From Octopus sinensis (lineage: Eukaryota), in assembly GCF_006345805.1 (NCBI RefSeq), contig NC_043025.1, forward strand, positions 6,448,001 through 6,512,000: 64,000 nucleotides of DNA, given 5' to 3'. The first letter of the stretch is position 1; every line of letters starts with the position of its first letter. The position numbers were made by a program, and so were the translations under genes. Below, piece after piece: positions 25,034 through 51,475 of the stretch. The notes below the pieces were generated by a model, which saw only the letters and a program-made list of their open reading frames with translations, did not search any database and was not told the origin of the DNA.

Positions 25034-26119
25034 CATCTAACACCCGTGGACATATTTACAAAGTAAGAAAACAGCACAGCTCCCATGACTTCAGGAAACA
25101 TTTTTTCACGCTGAGAGTTGCTGAAGCGTGGAACAAACTGCCGGCATCGGTTGTTCGTTGTCGGAGCACTACATCCTTCAAAACTTCCATGCTTCCTGAG
25201 ATTCGCCAACACTACACCTGATTTTCTCCCCTCCATACACACGCTGAAGCATGGAACAAACTGCCGGCATCGTTGTTAGTTGTCGGAGCCCTGCATCCTT
25301 CAAAACTTCCATGCTCTTGAAAGATTCGCCAACATACACCTGATTTTCTCCCCTCCATACACACGCTAACATGGAACAAACTGCCGGCATCGGTTGTTAG
25401 TTGTCGGAGCACTGCATCCTTCAAAACTTCCATGCTTCCTGAGATTCGCCAACACTACACCTGATTTTCTCCCCTCCTACACACGCTGAAGCATGGAACA
25501 AACTGCCGCAATCGGTTGTTAGTTGTCGGAGCACTGCATCCTTCAAAACTTCCATGCTTCTTGAAAGATTCGCAACACACAACCTGATTTTCTCCCCTCC
25601 ATACACACGCTGAAGCATGGAACAAACTGCCGGCATCGGTTGTTAGTTGTCGGAGCACTGCATCCTTCAAAACTTCCATGCTTCCTGAGATTCGCCAACA
25701 CTACACCTGATTTTCTCCCCTCCATACACACGCTGAAGCATGGAACAAACTGCCGGCATCGGTATTAGTTGTCGGAGCACTGCATCCTTCAAAACTTCCA
25801 TGCTTCCTGAGATTCGCCAACACCACACACTGATTTTCTCTCCTCCATACACACGCTGAAGCATGGAACAAACTGCCGGCATCGGTTGTTAGTTGTCGGA
25901 GCACTGCATCCCTCAAACCTCCCATGCTTCCTGAGATTCGCCAACCACTACACCTGATTTCTCCCCTCCATACACACACAAGCATGTATCTGACTCATAC
26001 ACTGTTGATCGCTTTCCGACATTTGTACATTACTGCATATGCTTTATACGCACTTTCTGACAAGTTGTGGTGCACTTGAGCACTGTATACAATAATTTCA
26101 TTATTATTATTATTATTAT
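25034..26119 (+). mobile_element. CR1-like LINE 3' end with ~123-bp segment amplified to 7 tandem copies
   Basis: KVRKQHSSHDFRKHFFTLRVAEAWNKLP (CR1-clade ORF2 C-terminal motif); GGAACAAACTGCC recurs at ~25130, 25253, 25373, 25495, 25619, 25742, 25865; ends in (ATT)n. Confidence 0.9.
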
Positions 26120-29838: not shown

Positions 29839-30027
29839 AAAGATATATATATATACATATATACAATGGGCTTCTTTCAGTTTCCATCTACCAAATCCAC
29901 TCACAAGGCTTTGGTCGGCCCAGGGCTATAGTAGAAGACACTTGCCCAAGGTACCACGCAGTGGGACTGAACCCGGAACCATGTGGTTGGTAAGCAAGCT
30001 ACTTACCACACAGCCACTCCTGCGCCT
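29573..30027 (-). mobile_element. SINE group A
   Basis: Full reverse-complement copy. Confidence 0.9.
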
Positions 30028-30275
30028 ATAGATATAGATATAAATGCTACACTTGTTTTCTACATTGATCCAGAGTAGCCATTTTAATATTTGCCCCTCA
30101 CACTCTAATTTTGGTCAGTCTAATATCAGCTCCCCCCTCTTAAATTTCAATCATTTTAATACCGGCCTCCTCCTCCTCCTCCTAAATTTTGGTCAGTTTA
30201 GTAGCAACTCTCTACTCCTAAATTTTAGCCATTTTAAAATAAGCACCCCTCCCCACCAGTTTTTGGTCTGTTTAA

Positions 30276-30604
30276 CCCCTTACCCAACAATTATTTTGAA
30301 AATAAATGTATTTTTTCAGACATATTTTATAATTGTTTTATTTTACTATGTTTTGAATGGTGATTTCGAGGTATATTTCAAACCTTATTTATTATGAATT
30401 TTAATTCAATAATATTGATTTTAAATTACCGCTTTGGGCAGAAACGAGTTATACTCGTATATGTCAAAAAAGAGTTTATAATAGACGAAGGAACTCGTTT
30501 GCTGTCGATTTTGGCAAGTCTATCTTTTGACGAGTTAACTCGCCAGAGATAGAAAAAAACGATTTCGGTCAAAACGCATATATTCGTTTCTGCCGGGTAA
30601 GGGG
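30276..30604. mobile_element. piggyBac-type MITE
   Basis: TTAA at 30272-30275 and 30605-30608; TIR CCCCTTACCC / GGGTAAGGGG. Confidence 0.85.
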
Positions 30605-30900
30605 TTAATATCAGCTCTCCTCACCCCAAACTGCCCCTCTACTTTTGGTTAGTTTAATATCAGCCAACACCAACCGCTCTCCTTTATTGGTCAGTTTAAT
30701 ATCAACCCCACACCCCATTCCACCCCAACTGCCCCCTACTTTTTGCTATTTCAGTATCAGCCCCTACATAACTGACCCTAATTTTTGGCCAGTTTAATAT
30801 CAGATTGCCCCTACTTCTGGTCACCACCACTACAACCCGTCTTCATCACAACTACCACCACTAAACAAATCTCTACCACCACCACCACCAGTTCCACAAC

Positions 30901-31528
30901 CTATTTTTTTACTACCCACAAGGGGCTAAACGCAGAGGAGACAAACAAGGACAGACAGACGGATTAAGTCGATTATATCGACCCCAGTGTGTAACTGTTA
31001 CTTAATTGTTGTTTGTTTGGTTGGGAGCTGACTCTTCTCCATCAGGTGATACCCATCTGTTAAGATTAAGGGCATCACCGTCAATGGATGCCCTTGGAGG
31101 TGCAACGTGATCAGAGACAGGACCTGGCAAAGCAGGGGCTGGACCTATATCCACAGGTATACCATTAGGTCTGGTTAATTGTAAATTCCATAATATTTTC
31201 AAATGGCTAATAATGAATGATGTTACTTAATTTATCGACCCCGAAAGGATGAAAGGCAAAGTCGACCTCAGCGGAATTTGAACTCAGAACGTAAGACACA
31301 CGAAATACCTATTTCTTTCCTACCCACAAGGGGCCAAACACAGAGAGGACAAACAAGGACAGACAAACGGATTAAGTTGATTAAATTGACCCCAGTATGT
31401 AACTGGTACTTAATTTATCGACCCCGAAAGGATGAAAGGCAAAGTTGACCTCGGCGGAATTTGAACTCAGAACGAAATACCACTAAGCATTTTGCCTGGC
31501 GTGCTAACGATTCTGCCAGCTTGCCGCC
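30901..31528 (-). mobile_element. SINE group M dimer interrupted by a 213-bp insertion
   Basis: Two body units joined at GAAATACCTATTTC; the first is split at TGTTACTTAATT. Confidence 0.85.
31008..31220 (-). pseudogene. Inserted coding-like fragment of unknown origin (71 open codons)
   Basis: 12-bp direct repeat TGTTACTTAATT at 30996-31007 and 31221-31232; minus frame SFIISHLKILWNLQLTRPNGIPVDIGPAPALPGPVSDHVAPPRASIDGDALNLNRWVSPDGEESAPNQTNN with no stop. Confidence 0.6.
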
Positions 31529-32010
31529 AGCTCCACAACCATCACGAACCTACCTTCGCCACTACCACAACCATCGCCACCACCACAACGGTCACCACCA
31601 GCACCATGGCCATTAACCTGATTCCATCAATGCCGTCGTCACCCCCCCCCCATTAATTACCAGTTTTACACTAAAATGTTTAGCAAAATCGTTGACCCAC
31701 TGGATTGATAGAGAGACAGCAACATAGACATCAGGTGTAAACTATAATGGTGATGCTCCAGCCTGGCCTTAATGGGATAGTAAAAGATGGTCAGAACGTG
31801 TGTGAGATAAAACCTACATTTATTTATGAGGACACACACGTATATACAAAAACACCTTTACACACACACACACACACATATACACACATACACACGTATA
31901 TACACACATACATATATATACATATATATATATACATATACACACACACACACATATACCTATATACATATGTCCAGACTTAGTTTTATATACACAGATA
32001 TGTGTATATA

Positions 32011-32050
<40 letters not shown>

Positions 32051-32636
32051 CACACAAACATATATACCTATATACATATGTCCACACTTTTATATATATA
32101 GTCACACATCCATACTTAGACATATATACATACATAAACATCCCCTTATATACACACACACATATATAAACATGTATGTATACATAAACATCTCATTATA
32201 CACACACACATATATACATTCCCAAACCTGCATACATACATACATACATACATACATACACATACATGCACATGTATGTATATGCATGCTCACACATGCA
32301 CAGATGTACACACACCTTCAGACACACATACACATACTTACATCAAAGATAAGCAAGAGTTCACCTCACATAATAGACAATGTCAGCTTTGTTTATCATC
32401 CTCTCTACAACGGGTGAACTGCCAGCCGCAGGAGAAAATAAAACAAAAAGTACACACACCACACACACACACACATTGTACAAGTGAGTTTTTCTACAGT
32501 GGGTATCTTAGATTAATTTTCACCTCTACTTTCAAAACTGGAGAAGTATTGTGAAAGAGAGAGACAGAGAGAAGCGGACTGATAGGATGTGCACATTCAG
32601 CATTATTATTATTATTATTATTTATTATTATTATTT

Positions 32637-33245
32637 AAGGCGGTGAGCTGGCAGAATCGTTAGCATGTCGAGCGAAATGCTTAGCGGTATTTCGGCTGCC
32701 GTTACGTTGTGAGTTCAAATTCCGCCGAGGTCGACTTTGCCTTTCATCCTTTCGGGGTCGATAAATTAAGTACCAGTTAAGCACTAGGGTCGATATAATC
32801 GACTTAATACCTATGTCTGTCCATGTTTGTCCCATCTATGTTTAGCCCCTTGTGGGTAATAAAGAAATAGGTATTTTGTCTGTCTTTATGTTCTGAGTTC
32901 AAATTCTGCCAAGGTCAACTTTACCTTTCATCGTTTTGGTGGGGTCGATAAATTAAGTACCAGTTACACACTGGGGTCGATGTAATCGACATAATCCCTT
33001 CCCCCAAATTTGAGACCTTTTGCTTCCAGTAGAAGGTTTTTTATTATTATTATATTATATTATTATTATTATTAAGGTGGTGAGCTGGCAGACTCGTTAG
33101 CACGCCGAGCGAAATGCTTAGCAGTATTTCACCCATCACTACATTCTGAGTTCAAATTCCTCCAAGGTCAACTTTGCCTTTCATCCTTTAAGGGTAAATA
33201 AAGTACCAGTTGTGTAATAGGGTTGATGTGATCGATTGTCCCCCT
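32637..33245 (+). mobile_element. SINE group M concatemer plus a second headed copy
   Basis: Head at 32637, junction AAAGAAATAGGTATTT at ~32860, new head at ~33073. Confidence 0.85.
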
Positions 33246-33389
33246 CTCCACAAAATATCTTTTCACTAGCCCGCTTTCAATTGCATGTATTTATGGAGTT
33301 TTTCTCGGTAGCTTTGTAATGTTTAGACATTCGTTCAGCATGGAGGAGAAAGGTCATGTTTTGACTTTTACCTTTAATATAATTATATA

Positions 33390-33935
33390 CTAGCACTATG
33401 TCCCAGCGTTGCCGGGTCATAGTGCTAGTGTATGCATATACAGCTGCGTGCGTGCGTGCGTGCGCACATACACGCGAGTACTGTCCAAATCTCCGACCAA
33501 TCACATACAACTAGCTGGCATTCAATTGGCGTATCAAGTTTTGGGCATTTTGATTGGGTTTTGGATAGAAAATTCACAAAAAAAAGTCACTCTCTATTGA
33601 TTTTTTAATGGCTTTGCGGGGTGACTGGGGAAATGTAAAGATGTGCACGACCACCCTTGGCGCGGTTTGAATGACCATAGAAAGTGTGAGCCCTCTAACT
33701 GAAAAATTATGGATTTGTATAAAGGATACACACACACAGACAGACATTTTGCCATTTATATATATATTTAATGGCTTTGCTGGGTGACTGGGGAAATGTA
33801 AAGATGTGCACGACCACCCTTGGACGGTTTTGAATGACCATAGAAAGTGTGAGCCCTCTAACTGAAAAATTGTGAATTTGTATAAAGGACACACACACAC
33901 ACACACAGACATTTTGCTGTTTATATATATATATA
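33390..33935 (-). mobile_element. Non-autonomous Helitron with 41-bp terminal hairpin and internal tandem duplication
   Basis: ACTAGCACTATG...CATAGTGCTAGT (33389-33429); 5' region has ACAGAC microsatellite and TTTATATA as in the other Helitrons. Confidence 0.7.
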
Positions 33936-37552: not shown

Positions 37553-37984
37553 ATGTATGTATTTTTGTCTGTGTTTGTCCCCCACCCTTGCTTGACAACC
37601 AGTGTTGGTGTGTTCATGTGATACCAATAGAATAAATACTAGGCTTACAAAGACTAAGTCCTGGGGTCGATTTCTTCATTCAAAAAACCATTCAAGGCCG
37701 CAGTCAAAATCTTTGAAACAAATAAAATATATATAGTGTAGCCAATGCCAGTGCCGCCTGACTGACTCCCGTGCCAGTAGTATATAAAAAGCACCCACAA
37801 CACTCTCAGAGTGGTTGGCATTAGGAAGGGCATCCAGCTGTAGAAACCTTGCCAGATCAGACTGGAACCTGGTGCAGCGTCCCGGCTTGCCAGTCCTCAG
37901 TCAAACCATCCAACCCATGCCAGCATGGAAAGCAGACGTTAAATGATAACGACGATGATATATAATGTTTGTGTGCATATATAT

Positions 37985-38939
37985 ATTGAGACCCCCTTCA
38001 ATCATGACTGACCGTGGGATTGCACCTAGAAGGTTACCCTCCCAGGCACAAGTCCGGGCAAGGTTGTTTGTGGAAGGCCAGCAGTCGCCCATGTATACCG
38101 GCCTTCCCTCTCCATGCCACCAGTGTTATCCAAGAGAAAGGCAAAGGGGCCGATACAGCTTGGTACCTGTGACGTCACAACTCATTTCTACAGTTGAGTG
38201 AACTGGTGCAACGTGAAATAAAGTGTCTTGCTCAAGAACACGACACACATCCTGGTCCAGGAATACATACATACATATATATTATATATATTCTGAGACC
38301 CCCTTCAGTCACAACACAGACCATGGGATTGCACCTAGAAAGTTACCCTCCCAGGCACAAGTCCAGGCAAGGTTGTTTGTGGAAGGCCAGCAGTCGCCCA
38401 TGTATACCGGCCTTCCCTCTCCATGCCACCAGTGTTATCCAAGGGAAAGGCAAAGGGGCCGATACAGCTTGGTACCTGTGACGTCACAATTCATTTCTAC
38501 AGCTGAGTGAACTGGAGCAACGTGAAATAAAGTGTCTTGCTCAAGAACACGACACACATCCTGGTCCAGGAATACATACATGTATATTATATATATTCTG
38601 AGACCCCCTTCGGTCACAACACAGACCATGGGATTGCACCTAGAAAGTTACCCTCCCAGGCACAAGTCCAGGCAAGGTTGTTTGTGGAAGGCCAGCAGTC
38701 GCCCATGTATACCGGCCTTCCCTCTCCATGCCACCAGTGTTGTCCAAGGGAAAGGCAAAGGGGCTGATACAGCTTGGCACCTGTGACGTCGCAACTCATT
38801 TCTACAGCTGAGTGAACTGGAGCAACGCGAAATAAAGTGTCTTGTTCAAGAACACAACACGCAGCCCGGTCCGGGATTCGAACTCACAACCTCACGATCG
38901 TAAGCTCGACGCTCTAACCGCTGAGCCATGCGCCTTCAC
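37985..38939 (-). mobile_element. SINE group C with body tandemly triplicated (~290 bp units)
   Basis: Single tRNA head at 38939 (GGCTCAGCGG; loop CTTACGA, Arg-like ACG; B box GAGTTCGAATCC); three bodies starting near TGAGACCCCCTTC at ~37988, 38295 and 38600. Confidence 0.9.
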
Positions 38940-49636: not shown

Positions 49637-49784
49637 AATATTATGGAATAAATCCAAACTTACAGGGAAAAATCAGATTTAGGATTGAATCCAATTTTAT
49701 AGTAAAATATTATATTATATTAAATTAGAGACAAAACGACTATTAGGCAAATCATACAATGAAAAACTTGAGCCAATACATATG

Positions 49785-49990
49785 TATGTATATGTCTCTA
49801 ATATAATATGATATATGTATATATATATATGTATGTATGTATGTAGTATGTATGTATGTAGTATGTATGTATGTAGTATGTATGTATGAAGTATGTATGT
49901 ATGAAGTATGTATGTATGTAGTATGTATGTATATATGTATGTATGTATATATGTATGTATGTATGTATATATATATATATATGTATGTAT

Positions 49991-50024
<34 letters not shown>

Positions 50025-50165
50025 GTATATATATGCATGTATGTATGTATGTATATATATGTATGTATGTATATATATGCATGTATGTATGTATGTATAT
50101 ATATGTATGTATGTATATATAATGCATGTATGTATATAATATATATATATATATGTATATATATG

Positions 50166-50218
<53 letters not shown>

Positions 50219-50366
50219 TATGTATTATAATATGTATGTATTATAGTTAATGTATGTATGTTATATATGTATGTATATATAGTATGTATGTATATATGTA
50301 TGTATGTATCTATATGTATGTATATATATGCATGTATGTATGTTATAGTATGTATATATATATATG

Positions 50367-50397
<31 letters not shown>

Positions 50398-51450
50398 GCA
50401 TGTATGTATGTATATATGTATGTATGTAATATATATATATGTATGTTATATATATGTATGTATGTATATTATTATGTATGTAAGTATATATATGTATGTA
50501 TGTATATATATATGTATGTATGTATGTATATATGTATGTATTATGTATTATATATGTATGTATTATATATATGCATGTATGTATGTATATATATGTATGT
50601 TATATATGTATGTATATATATGCATGTATGTATGTATATCTGTAGTATATATATGTATGTATATATATGCATGTATGTATGTATATATATGTATGTATAA
50701 TATATGCATGTATGTATGTATATATATGTTATATATATATGTATGTATATATATGCATGTATGTATGTATATATATGTATGTATGTATATATATATATGT
50801 ATGTATATATCTGTATGTATGTATAATATATGGTATGTTGTATATATATGTATGTATGTATATATATATGTAGGTATGTATATATATATTATGTATGTAT
50901 GTATTATATATGTATGTATGTATGTATATATATATTATGTAGTATATATATGCATGTATGTATGTGATGTATATTATATATATGTATTTTGTATGTATAT
51001 ATATGTATGTATGTATATATATATATATGTATGTGTATGTATGTGTATATATATATATATATGTATGTGTATATATATATATATGTATGTGTATGTATGT
51101 ATATATATATATATGTATGTATGTGTATGTATGTATATATATATATGTATGTATGTGTATGTATGTATATATATATATATGTATGTATGTGTATGTATGT
51201 ATATATATATATATGTATGTTGTGTATGTATGTATATATATATATATGTATGTATGTGTATGTATGTATATATGTATGTGTATGTATGTATATATATATA
51301 TGTATGTATGTATGTGTATGTATGTATATATGTATGTGTATGTATGTATATATATATATGTATGTATGTATGTGTATGTATGTATGTATATGTATGTGTA
51401 TGTATATATACATATATGTATGTGTATGTATGTATGTATGTATATATGTA
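49785..51450. repeat. ~1.7-kb (TATG)n/(TA)n compound microsatellite
   Basis: Direct reading; source of the 416-aa M/Y/V/C/I ORF. Confidence 0.95.
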
Positions 51451-51475
51451 TGGATCTCTGGATCTTTCCTTCTAT

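What the first reader, a model, noticed from the sequence alone, without database searches (positions are those of the whole stretch)
30996..31232. 213-bp fully open coding-like insertion with 12-bp TSD inside a SINE
The insert splits a group M SINE. Both flanks carry TGTTACTTAATT, including a G>T change relative to the TGGTACTTAATT seen in sister copies, so the duplication arose at insertion. The insert is exactly 71 codons, stop-free on the minus strand, and compositionally complex (…WNLQLTRPNGIPVDIGPAPALPGPVSDHVAPPRASIDGDALNLNRW…). It is the most protein-like non-transposon sequence in the window. There is no poly(A); the minus-strand 3' end is CCAACCAAACAAACAAC. Candidate origins (inference): an endogenous RNA-virus fragment, a truncated retrocopy of a host mRNA, or the end of an unrecognised retroelement.
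Basis: partly seen in the sequence, partly recalled or inferred. Interest (0 to 1): 0.75.

Follow-up and report, generated by a model that had tools for sequence, protein, structure and literature searches.

The report
Truncated octopus LINE fragment inside SINE
The 213-bp "coding-like" insert is a dead, doubly truncated piece from near the 5' end of a known kind of octopus jumping gene (an RTE-like LINE). It is neither a viral relic nor a host-gene copy, and its only unusual trait is that it carries a clean 12-bp target-site duplication while lacking the element's 3' end.

Summary
An exact 12-bp duplication (TGTTACTTAATT) flanks a 213-bp insert (31008-31220) that splits a SINE unit. Nine sister SINE copies in the window carry the site once, with G where both flanks have T. 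The minus strand is open for 71 codons.

The peptide matches the N-terminal leader, upstream of the endonuclease domain, of an Octopus sinensis non-LTR retrotransposon (E 3.5e-24). At DNA level it is 95-96% identical to ~3.3-kb copies, and about 93% identical at protein level. Those copies encode an endonuclease plus a reverse transcriptase and all end in the same (ATG)n tail. NCBI names some of their products "craniofacial development protein 2-like".

The insert covers only element positions ~152-383: the end of the 5'UTR, the start codon and the leader. It is truncated on both sides, lacks the tail, and carries one frameshifting deletion. About 56 of the 71 open codons are the true LINE frame; the rest are open by luck.

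The best mechanism is aberrant target-primed reverse transcription with internal priming. It probably follows the twin-priming variant in which only a stub of the tail is copied: five filler bases plus two TSD bases read AATGATG, the start of the family's tail (chance ~0.007). No viral or host-gene origin is supported. It is ordinary and of low interest.

The parts
30899..31007 (-). Left piece of the interrupted SINE unit. The SINE is in sense on the minus strand, and this unit lacks the tRNA-like head.
   Evidence: 89% identical to sister copy 31307-31415 (family D6); alignment.
30996..31007 (.). Target-site duplication, copy 1 (TGTTACTTAATT).
   Evidence: Exact match to 31221-31232. Nine sister copies have it once, as TGGTACTTAATT.
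31008..31220 (-). Fragment of an RTE-like LINE covering element positions ~152-383 of ~3320: the end of the 5'UTR, the start codon and the N-terminal leader upstream of the endonuclease domain. It is truncated at both ends, has no tail, and its reading frame is broken once by a frameshifting deletion.
   Evidence: phmmer E 3.5e-24 to an O. sinensis LINE product. blastn to L001:5223-5460. 95-96% identity over insert bases 6-208/213. tblastn 93% over 56 aa. Element coordinates.
31216..31220 (+). Five filler bases (AATGA on the + strand) with no counterpart at this point in the LINE copies compared. With the next two bases (TG of the duplication) they read AATGATG, the start of the family's 3' tail.
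   Evidence: Homology to the LINE stops at 31215. AATGATG is present in the 3' termini of all four O. sinensis copies. Chance of a 5-nt filler completing a 7-mer of the family's 3' terminus is about 0.007.
31221..31232 (.). Target-site duplication, copy 2 (TGTTACTTAATT).
31221..31297 (-). Right piece of the interrupted SINE unit.
   Evidence: 94% identical to 31404-31480 (family D8); alignment.
31293..31528 (-). Adjacent uninterrupted sister SINE copy with its head, showing the empty-site sequence CTGGTACTTAATTTATCG.
   Evidence: (I1, I8).

Best explanation
The insert is a dead-on-arrival fragment of an RTE-like non-LTR retrotransposon (LINE) of octopus. It was pasted into a SINE by the LINE's own machinery in an aberrant round of target-primed reverse transcription.

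**Shown**
- The sequence is the stretch from the end of the 5'UTR through the first ~70 codons of the LINE's single endonuclease-plus-reverse-transcriptase ORF.
- It lacks both the first ~150 nt and the last ~2.9 kb of the element, including the (ATG)n tail.
- It is flanked by a perfect 12-bp target-site duplication.
- It carries one frameshifting deletion.

**Inferred**
- The element's endonuclease made staggered nicks 12 bp apart in the SINE.
- The 3'-OH ending ...CTTAATT annealed to an internal A/C-rich stretch about 385 nt from the RNA's 5' end, not to the RNA's tail.
- Reverse transcriptase copied about 235 nt toward the 5' end and stopped.

**Most likely variant (roughly 45% of the total)**
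- This is the 'twin priming with a very short non-inverted part' described for primate L1 (PMC2837659).
- The first nick primed normally on the tail but copied only about 5 nt. That stub survives as the AATGA filler on the + strand, next to TG of the duplication.
- The second nick primed internally and produced the body.

The fragment has no function. It cannot encode endonuclease or reverse transcriptase.
For: **Identity**
- phmmer hit of E 3.5e-24 and 89% identity to an O. sinensis protein. Nine more relatives start MEFTINCTRVPIP... and run into an IDIIAVQEHR endonuclease motif.
- NCBI names the relatives 'craniofacial development protein 2-like', and they carry PF03372/PF14529.
- A near-intact copy in L002 has Exo_endo_phos at aa 88-319 and RVT_1. 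L001 also has RVT_1.
- DNA identity is 95-96%.

**Family behaves as a LINE**
- Four O. sinensis copies are 96-97% alike, share one 3' end (...GGTCGAACAATGATGATGAT) and have different 5' truncation points.

**Truncation on both sides**
- The 5'UTR upstream of the insert's start is conserved in eight other loci.
- The ORF continues past the insert's end in L001, L002 and L005.

**Insertion signature**
- The 12-bp duplication and the single-copy sister sites.

**Twin-priming variant**
- Filler plus TG reads AATGATG, found in every family tail; chance about 0.007.
- A published precedent has the same architecture.

**Background**
- RTE LINEs are known and recently active in Octopus (PMC9115989; PMC13282606).
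Against: - The tail-derived reading rests on 5 bases. They could equally be a local slippage product: on the + strand the filler begins with AATG, repeating the four bases just before it.
- Microhomology at the inferred internal priming site is only about 2 nt.
- The internal deletion implied by the twin-priming reading (about 2.9 kb) is very large.
- RTE-type elements are generally thought to recognise their own 3' end (my own knowledge). That makes internal initiation atypical for this clade.
- I could not search an octopus genome, so I cannot exclude a family of copies with these same boundaries.
- Clade assignment to RTE rests on architecture, size, tail type and NCBI naming, not on a phylogeny.
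Confidence: 0.8

Rival explanations
1. It is one member of an unrecognised short non-autonomous retroelement family built from the LINE's 5'UTR and leader. Such a family would be copied many times with the same two boundaries by the LINE machinery acting in trans.
For: Clean boundaries and a clean duplication. The frameshifting deletion is absent from all the other loci compared and could be a subfamily marker.
Against: - There is no second copy in the 64-kb window or in about 90 kb of fetched octopus loci.
- It lacks the family's 3' tail, the part a LINE-dependent element would normally need.
- The one metagenome hit to the deletion junction was an unrelated chance 23-mer.
- No octopus genome could be searched.
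Confidence: 0.07
2. A LINE cDNA or RNA fragment was captured as filler during repair of a staggered double-strand break. This would be non-classical insertion rather than completed target-primed reverse transcription.
For: Truncation at both ends, no tail, and short unmatched filler at one junction. These features are typical of repair-associated captures (my own knowledge of non-classical L1/Alu insertions).
Against: Non-classical insertions typically lack target-site duplications and often delete target DNA. Here the duplication is a perfect 12 bp with no loss of SINE sequence. The filler matches the family tail.
Confidence: 0.08
3. A longer, ordinary 5'-truncated LINE insertion was later reduced by an internal deletion that removed everything from about position 385 to the tail.
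For: Deletions inside TEs are common. The region at the 3' boundary is A/C-rich low-complexity sequence that expands into a microsatellite in one relative (L011).
Against: The deletion would have to end exactly at the last base of the element to leave the duplication intact, with not one tail base on that side. It also does not explain the filler at the other junction.
Confidence: 0.04
4. It is an endogenous RNA-virus fragment or a retrocopy of a host mRNA. These were the first reader's leading candidates.
For: Weak PDB matches to norovirus VP1 over 28 residues (E 0.026). Coding-like composition.
Against: - The LINE match is 22 orders of magnitude better and extends at DNA level into the LINE's non-coding 5'UTR.
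- There is no Pfam hit and no poly(A).
- The only named relatives are TE-derived gene models.
Confidence: 0.01

Closest known systems
RTE-clade LINEs of Octopus (for example RTE-2_OV of O. vulgaris, PMC9115989; 13 recently active RTE families in O. vulgaris, PMC13282606)
   Same: Relatives of the insert have a single ORF with an N-terminal APE-type endonuclease followed by a reverse transcriptase. They are about 3.3 kb long, have almost no 3'UTR, end in a trinucleotide-repeat tail, and show variable 5' truncation.
   Different: RTE-2_OV is described with a 3327-nt ORF, UTRs of about 600 nt and a C2H2 zinc finger. The copies seen here have a shorter ORF region of about 3.1 kb, a 5'UTR of roughly 180-220 nt, and no zinc-finger Pfam hit. 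This is probably a different RTE-like family. No phylogeny was run.
[quoted passage not shown] 2010, Mob DNA 1:7, PMC2837659)
   Same: A 3'-truncated LINE body bounded by target-site duplications, with an inverted remnant of the tail at the body's 5' end. Here that remnant is CATCATT, the inverse of AATGATG.
   Different: Those loci are primate L1 with long poly(T) stretches. Here the element is RTE-like with an (ATG)n tail, the remnant is only 5-7 nt, and the body comes from the extreme 5' region, implying about 2.9 kb skipped.
Ordinary 5'-truncated LINE insertion
   Same: Made by the same machinery, flanked by a target-site duplication, and non-functional on arrival.
   Different: Ordinary copies keep the 3' end and tail (L001, L002, L007, L008). 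This one lacks them.

Membership tests
Non-LTR retrotransposon, RTE-like | The insert is homologous to an element encoding an APE-type endonuclease followed by a reverse transcriptase in one ORF | tested here: met
   Searches show the homology. Searches show Exo_endo_phos, Exo_endo_phos_2 and RVT_1 in relatives.
Non-LTR retrotransposon, RTE-like | Copies share one 3' end with a very short 3'UTR and a short simple-repeat tail, and differ in 5' truncation | tested here: met
   Four O. sinensis copies end ...GGTCGAACAATGAT(G/A)ATGATGAT. Their 5' ends fall at four different points.
Non-LTR retrotransposon, RTE-like | No separate ORF1 upstream of the endonuclease/RT ORF | tested here: met
   Only about 180-220 nt of conserved 5'UTR precede the start codon.
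Non-LTR retrotransposon, RTE-like | The reverse transcriptase groups with the RTE clade in a phylogeny | not testable with these tools
   No named reference LINE set is available. The RT search returned unnamed proteins. The only pointer is NCBI's 'craniofacial development protein 2-like' naming of the endonuclease part. That this gene is RTE-derived is my own knowledge; two literature searches found no paper to cite.
Canonical TPRT insertion | Target-site duplication | tested here: met
   12/12 identical; sister copies have the site once.
Canonical TPRT insertion | The element's 3' end and tail abut the downstream duplication | tested here: not met
   In the LINE-sense orientation the insert ends at element position ~383 of ~3320, with no (ATG)n on that side.
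Twin-priming variant with very short non-inverted part | Inverted tail remnant at the 5' end of a 3'-truncated body, within the duplications | tested here: inconclusive
   5 filler nt plus 2 duplication nt read AATGATG on the + strand, which is present in all four family tails. Chance is about 0.007, but the stretch is very short.
Twin-priming variant with very short non-inverted part | Microhomology between the target 3' end and the internal priming site | tested here: inconclusive
   At most about 2 nt (AA/TT). The alignment at the boundary is ambiguous because of an internal A/C-rich repeat.
Endogenous viral element | Significant similarity to a viral protein that is better than to any cellular or TE protein | tested here: not met
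   The best viral match is norovirus VP1 at E 0.026 over 28 aa, against the LINE at E 3.5e-24. No Pfam family matched.
Processed retrocopy of a host mRNA | A poly(A) tail and homology to a host gene's mature mRNA | tested here: not met
   There is no poly(A). The homologues are LINE copies, including their non-coding 5'UTR.
Non-autonomous (SINE-like) family | Multiple dispersed copies sharing both boundaries | not testable with these tools
   None in the window or the fetched loci. No octopus genome was available to search.

The most novel reading that the evidence does not exclude
The fragment would be a product of twin priming by an RTE-like LINE with a trinucleotide-repeat tail. That would show that the 'tail-stub plus internally primed body' pathway, described for primate L1, also operates in a stringent-type LINE clade of a mollusc. 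If it recurs, this pathway would scatter promoter- and start-codon-bearing 5' leader fragments through the octopus genome. Such recurrence might be helped by the family's 5'UTR motif CATTATTAGCC, which resembles the inverse of the family's own 3' end.
Probability: 0.35. Interest if true: 0.3.

Novelty: new member of a known kind. Interest (0 to 1): 0.15.

Why it matters
It matters mostly as a correction. A sequence flagged as a possible endogenous virus or novel coding insert is an ordinary LINE fragment. Its coding-like look is inherited from the LINE's ORF.

There is one minor point of interest for transposon biology. A tail-less piece from the 5' region with a perfect target-site duplication is an uncommon insertion architecture. 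It hints that internal or twin priming occurs in RTE-like LINEs of cephalopods, whose activity in the octopus brain is currently debated.

For annotation, the case shows that NCBI gene models named 'craniofacial development protein 2-like' or 'uncharacterized protein' in Octopus sinensis can be LINE copies.

Tried and rejected
- **Pfam scan of the 71-aa peptide.** No family at E ≤ 10.
- **PDB sequence search.** Only weak norovirus VP1 and Prp6 matches (E ≥ 0.026). Rejected as noise once the LINE match was found.
- **Rfam scan of 30000-33500.** Only microsatellite-driven sub-threshold miRNA noise, and nothing in the insert. ARAGORN found no tRNA.
- **Word-indexed protein search with the peptide.** One hit only. 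The exhaustive HMMER search was what found the family.
- **Metagenome scan for the 22-nt sequence spanning the insert's deletion.** One hit (L006), an unrelated chance 23-mer.
- **RT-domain protein search to get clade names.** 1374 hits, essentially all unnamed.
- **Shared boundaries in short ENA contigs.** I checked whether leader-only ORFs in L009, L010 and L011 share the insert's boundaries. L010 and L011 are diverged copies whose 5'UTR still aligns. L009 breaks at a different point. No shared boundary was found.
- **Codon-level comparison of the leader among copies.** pN/pS was about 0.4-0.8 among the LINE copies, and 1.3 for the L003/L004 versus L005 pairs. It is noisy, the window rows include misaligned flank codons, and it shows only weak constraint on the leader.
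- **Literature link CFDP2-RTE/BovB.** No paper found in the library.
- **PDB search with the endonuclease-bearing part of a relative.** No hit at E ≤ 0.001.

Full report
**1. The observation**

Window bases 30996-31007 and 31221-31232 are both TGTTACTTAATT. A one-mismatch search finds nine further sites in the window, all TGGTACTTAATT and all inside copies of the same SINE, against about one match expected by chance.

The left piece of the interrupted SINE unit (30899-31007) is 89% identical to 31307-31415. The right piece (31221-31297) is 94% identical to 31404-31480. The two matches overlap on exactly the 12 bp in the sister copy (families D6 and D8; alignment). The 12-bp target-site duplication is therefore real. 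The G>T change shared by both copies shows that the duplication was made from this particular SINE copy.

The 213 bases between them (31008-31220) translate without a stop on the minus strand (71 codons). The frame is closed on each side by the TAA inside the duplication. GC content by codon position is 53%, 48% and 30%, a coding-like periodicity.

Openness by itself is weak evidence. 2.7% of shuffles of the insert are fully open in some frame, and so are 18.7% of all 213-bp windows of this repeat-rich 64 kb. There is no second copy of the insert in the window.

**2. What the sequence is**

Pfam found nothing. The PDB search gave only weak matches, the best being a norovirus capsid protein at E 0.026 over 28 residues.

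An exhaustive HMMER search of 1.84 billion representative proteins gave 14 hits.
- The best is P0001 (E 3.5e-24, 89% identity).
- Nine more are short proteins that begin MEFTINCTRVPIP..., align to the peptide from about residue 16 to 69, and where long enough continue into ...IDIIAVQEHR....
- The remaining four are unrelated repetitive proteins.

P0001 is NCBI's 'uncharacterized protein LOC115227321, partial [Octopus sinensis]'. Its relatives are named 'craniofacial development protein 2-like [Octopus sinensis]' and carry the endonuclease families PF03372 and PF14529.

The contig encoding P0001 (L001) holds a ~3.3-kb element. The insert aligns to L001:5223-5460 only, and a reverse-transcriptase domain lies about 1.6 kb downstream (RVT_1, E 2e-29).

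Three further O. sinensis copies (in L002, L007 and L008) are 96-97% identical to it. The L002 copy has two long open stretches of 525 and 468 codons, so at least one break. Exo_endo_phos lies at residues 88-319 of the first stretch and RVT_1 in the second. The L001 copy is interrupted at least five times.

All four copies end in the same sequence...GGTCGAACAATGAT(G/A)ATGATGAT, followed by unrelated flanks. They begin at four different points. That is the classic picture of a LINE: common 3' end, variable 5' truncation.

A single endonuclease-plus-RT ORF, no room for an ORF1, a length of about 3.3 kb, almost no 3'UTR and a trinucleotide-repeat tail are the features of the RTE clade (my own knowledge of Malik and Eickbush's description). 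RTE LINEs are documented and recently active in Octopus (PMC9115989; PMC13282606). I did not run a phylogeny, so 'RTE-like' is an architectural assignment.

**3. Which part of the element, and in what state**

In the LINE's sense orientation (window minus strand), insert bases 6 to 208-213 align to L001 and L002 at 95-96% identity. At protein level, residues 14-69 of the L002 ORF match at 93%.

In element coordinates the insert spans about 152-383 of about 3320. That is the last ~25 nt of the 5'UTR, the start codon and the N-terminal leader that precedes the endonuclease domain.

The 5'UTR upstream of the insert's first base is conserved in L001-L005 and L009-L011. The ORF continues beyond the insert's last base in L001, L002 and L005. 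The insert is therefore truncated at both ends.

No other piece of this LINE is present in the window, by blastn or tblastn.

Relative to every copy compared, the insert carries one deletion whose length is not a multiple of three. As a result the LINE's own start codon is in a different frame from the 71-codon open frame. Only about 56 of the 71 codons are the true LINE frame, and the remainder are open by chance.

It is not a tail.

**4. How it got there**

A canonical LINE insertion keeps the 3' end and tail. This one does not, yet it has a perfect 12-bp duplication with no loss of SINE sequence. That argues for staggered endonuclease nicks rather than random break repair.

Whatever the details, a target DNA 3'-OH (+ strand ...CTTAATT-3') must have primed cDNA synthesis at an internal site about 385 nt from the RNA's 5' end. 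Synthesis then stopped about 150 nt short of that end.

At the other junction, five bases (31216-31220, AATGA on the + strand) have no counterpart at that point in any LINE copy compared. Together with the first two bases of the duplication they read AATGATG. That is exactly the start of the family's tail and is present in all four O. sinensis 3' termini. The chance that a random 5-nt filler completes any 7-mer of those termini is about 0.007.

This is the architecture that Meyer et al. (2010, PMC2837659) described for 39 primate L1 loci. They attributed it to twin priming in which the first reverse transcriptase copies only part of the tail while a second, internally primed cDNA forms the body. 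Read in the sense orientation, such a locus is a 3'-truncated LINE with an inverted tail remnant at its 5' end, inside target-site duplications.

I therefore favour this variant (about 45%). Plain internal initiation with slippage-derived filler is next (about 30%). The filler begins with AATG, repeating the four preceding bases, so slippage is a real alternative. The lesser rivals are:
- capture at a staggered break (about 8%);
- an unrecognised non-autonomous family (about 7%);
- later deletion of a longer copy (about 4%);
- a viral or host-mRNA origin (about 1%).

The steps from nicking to priming are inferred. Only the end product is observed.

**5. Comparison with the known, and novelty**

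The fragment belongs to a known kind of element, an octopus RTE-like LINE. Its architecture has a published precedent in primate L1. It fails one defining feature of a canonical TPRT insertion (3' end adjacent to the duplication). It meets, inconclusively, the features of the twin-priming variant.

It is not an endogenous viral element and not a host-gene retrocopy. I rate it 'new member of a known kind', with interest 0.15. The only mildly novel reading is that twin priming operates in a non-L1, microsatellite-tailed LINE clade of a mollusc.

**6. Limits**

No octopus genome could be searched, so copy number and empty-site alleles are untested. The species of the window was not determined. 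Its SINE and LINE sequences are 88-96% identical to O. sinensis copies. The one metagenome scan returned a chance match.

Noticed in passing
window 57034-60326: A 3.3-kb minisatellite of a 26-bp unit (GTGATGGTGCCACGTAAGAAGCACTG), about 127 copies at 91% match. It is G+C-rich (about 53%) with strong G skew. It produces artefactual ORFs of 823-1101 codons in three minus-strand frames.
   Followed up: partly
window 61758-62503; also 30899-31528 and 11252-11803: SINE bodies occur as head-less tandem arrays with a 184-bp period (4 units at 61758-62503). The SINE unit hit by the LINE fragment is itself a head-less unit abutting the next copy. A different SINE-like 184-bp unit is repeated 3 times at 11252-11803. 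The same 184-bp arrays occur in O. sinensis locus L001 (2254-3783).
   Followed up: partly
window 49781-51452 and 62860-64000: Long microsatellites: (TATG)n-like over 1.6 kb, and (TA)n of more than 1.1 kb running off the window end. They account for the AT-rich troughs in the composition profile.
   Followed up: no
window 9484-10379; 25120-25977; 37977-38876: Further tandem arrays: a 15-bp unit x61, a 122/246-bp unit x7/x3.5, and a 305-bp unit x2.9. Their nature was not examined.
   Followed up: no
L001:8224-8633: In one O. sinensis copy of the LINE, the last ~137 bp of the element (the 3' end of the ORF plus the start of the tail) is tandemly triplicated. The L002 copy has it once.
   Followed up: partly
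L002:9700-9720 versus L002:12860-12884 (also L001, L003, L005): The family's conserved 5'UTR motif CATTATTAGCC, where the window fragment begins, resembles the inverse of the family's own 3' end (CATTGTTCGACC; about 9 of 12). This may be coincidence, or a microhomology that favours joining at that point.
   Followed up: no
L003, L004, L005, L009-L011 (ENA marine and TARA metagenome contigs): Cephalopod-type LINE fragments turn up as short contigs in ocean metagenome assemblies, and one related protein is labelled as a bacterial MAG protein (P0173, 'Gammaproteobacteria bacterium'). This is probably eukaryotic DNA in metagenome bins.
   Followed up: no
window 31008-31220, minus-strand peptide: There are weak sequence matches of residues ~9-36 to the P domain of norovirus VP1 (best E 0.026). 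Several PDB entries hit, but all belong to one family, and I judged it noise.
   Followed up: yes
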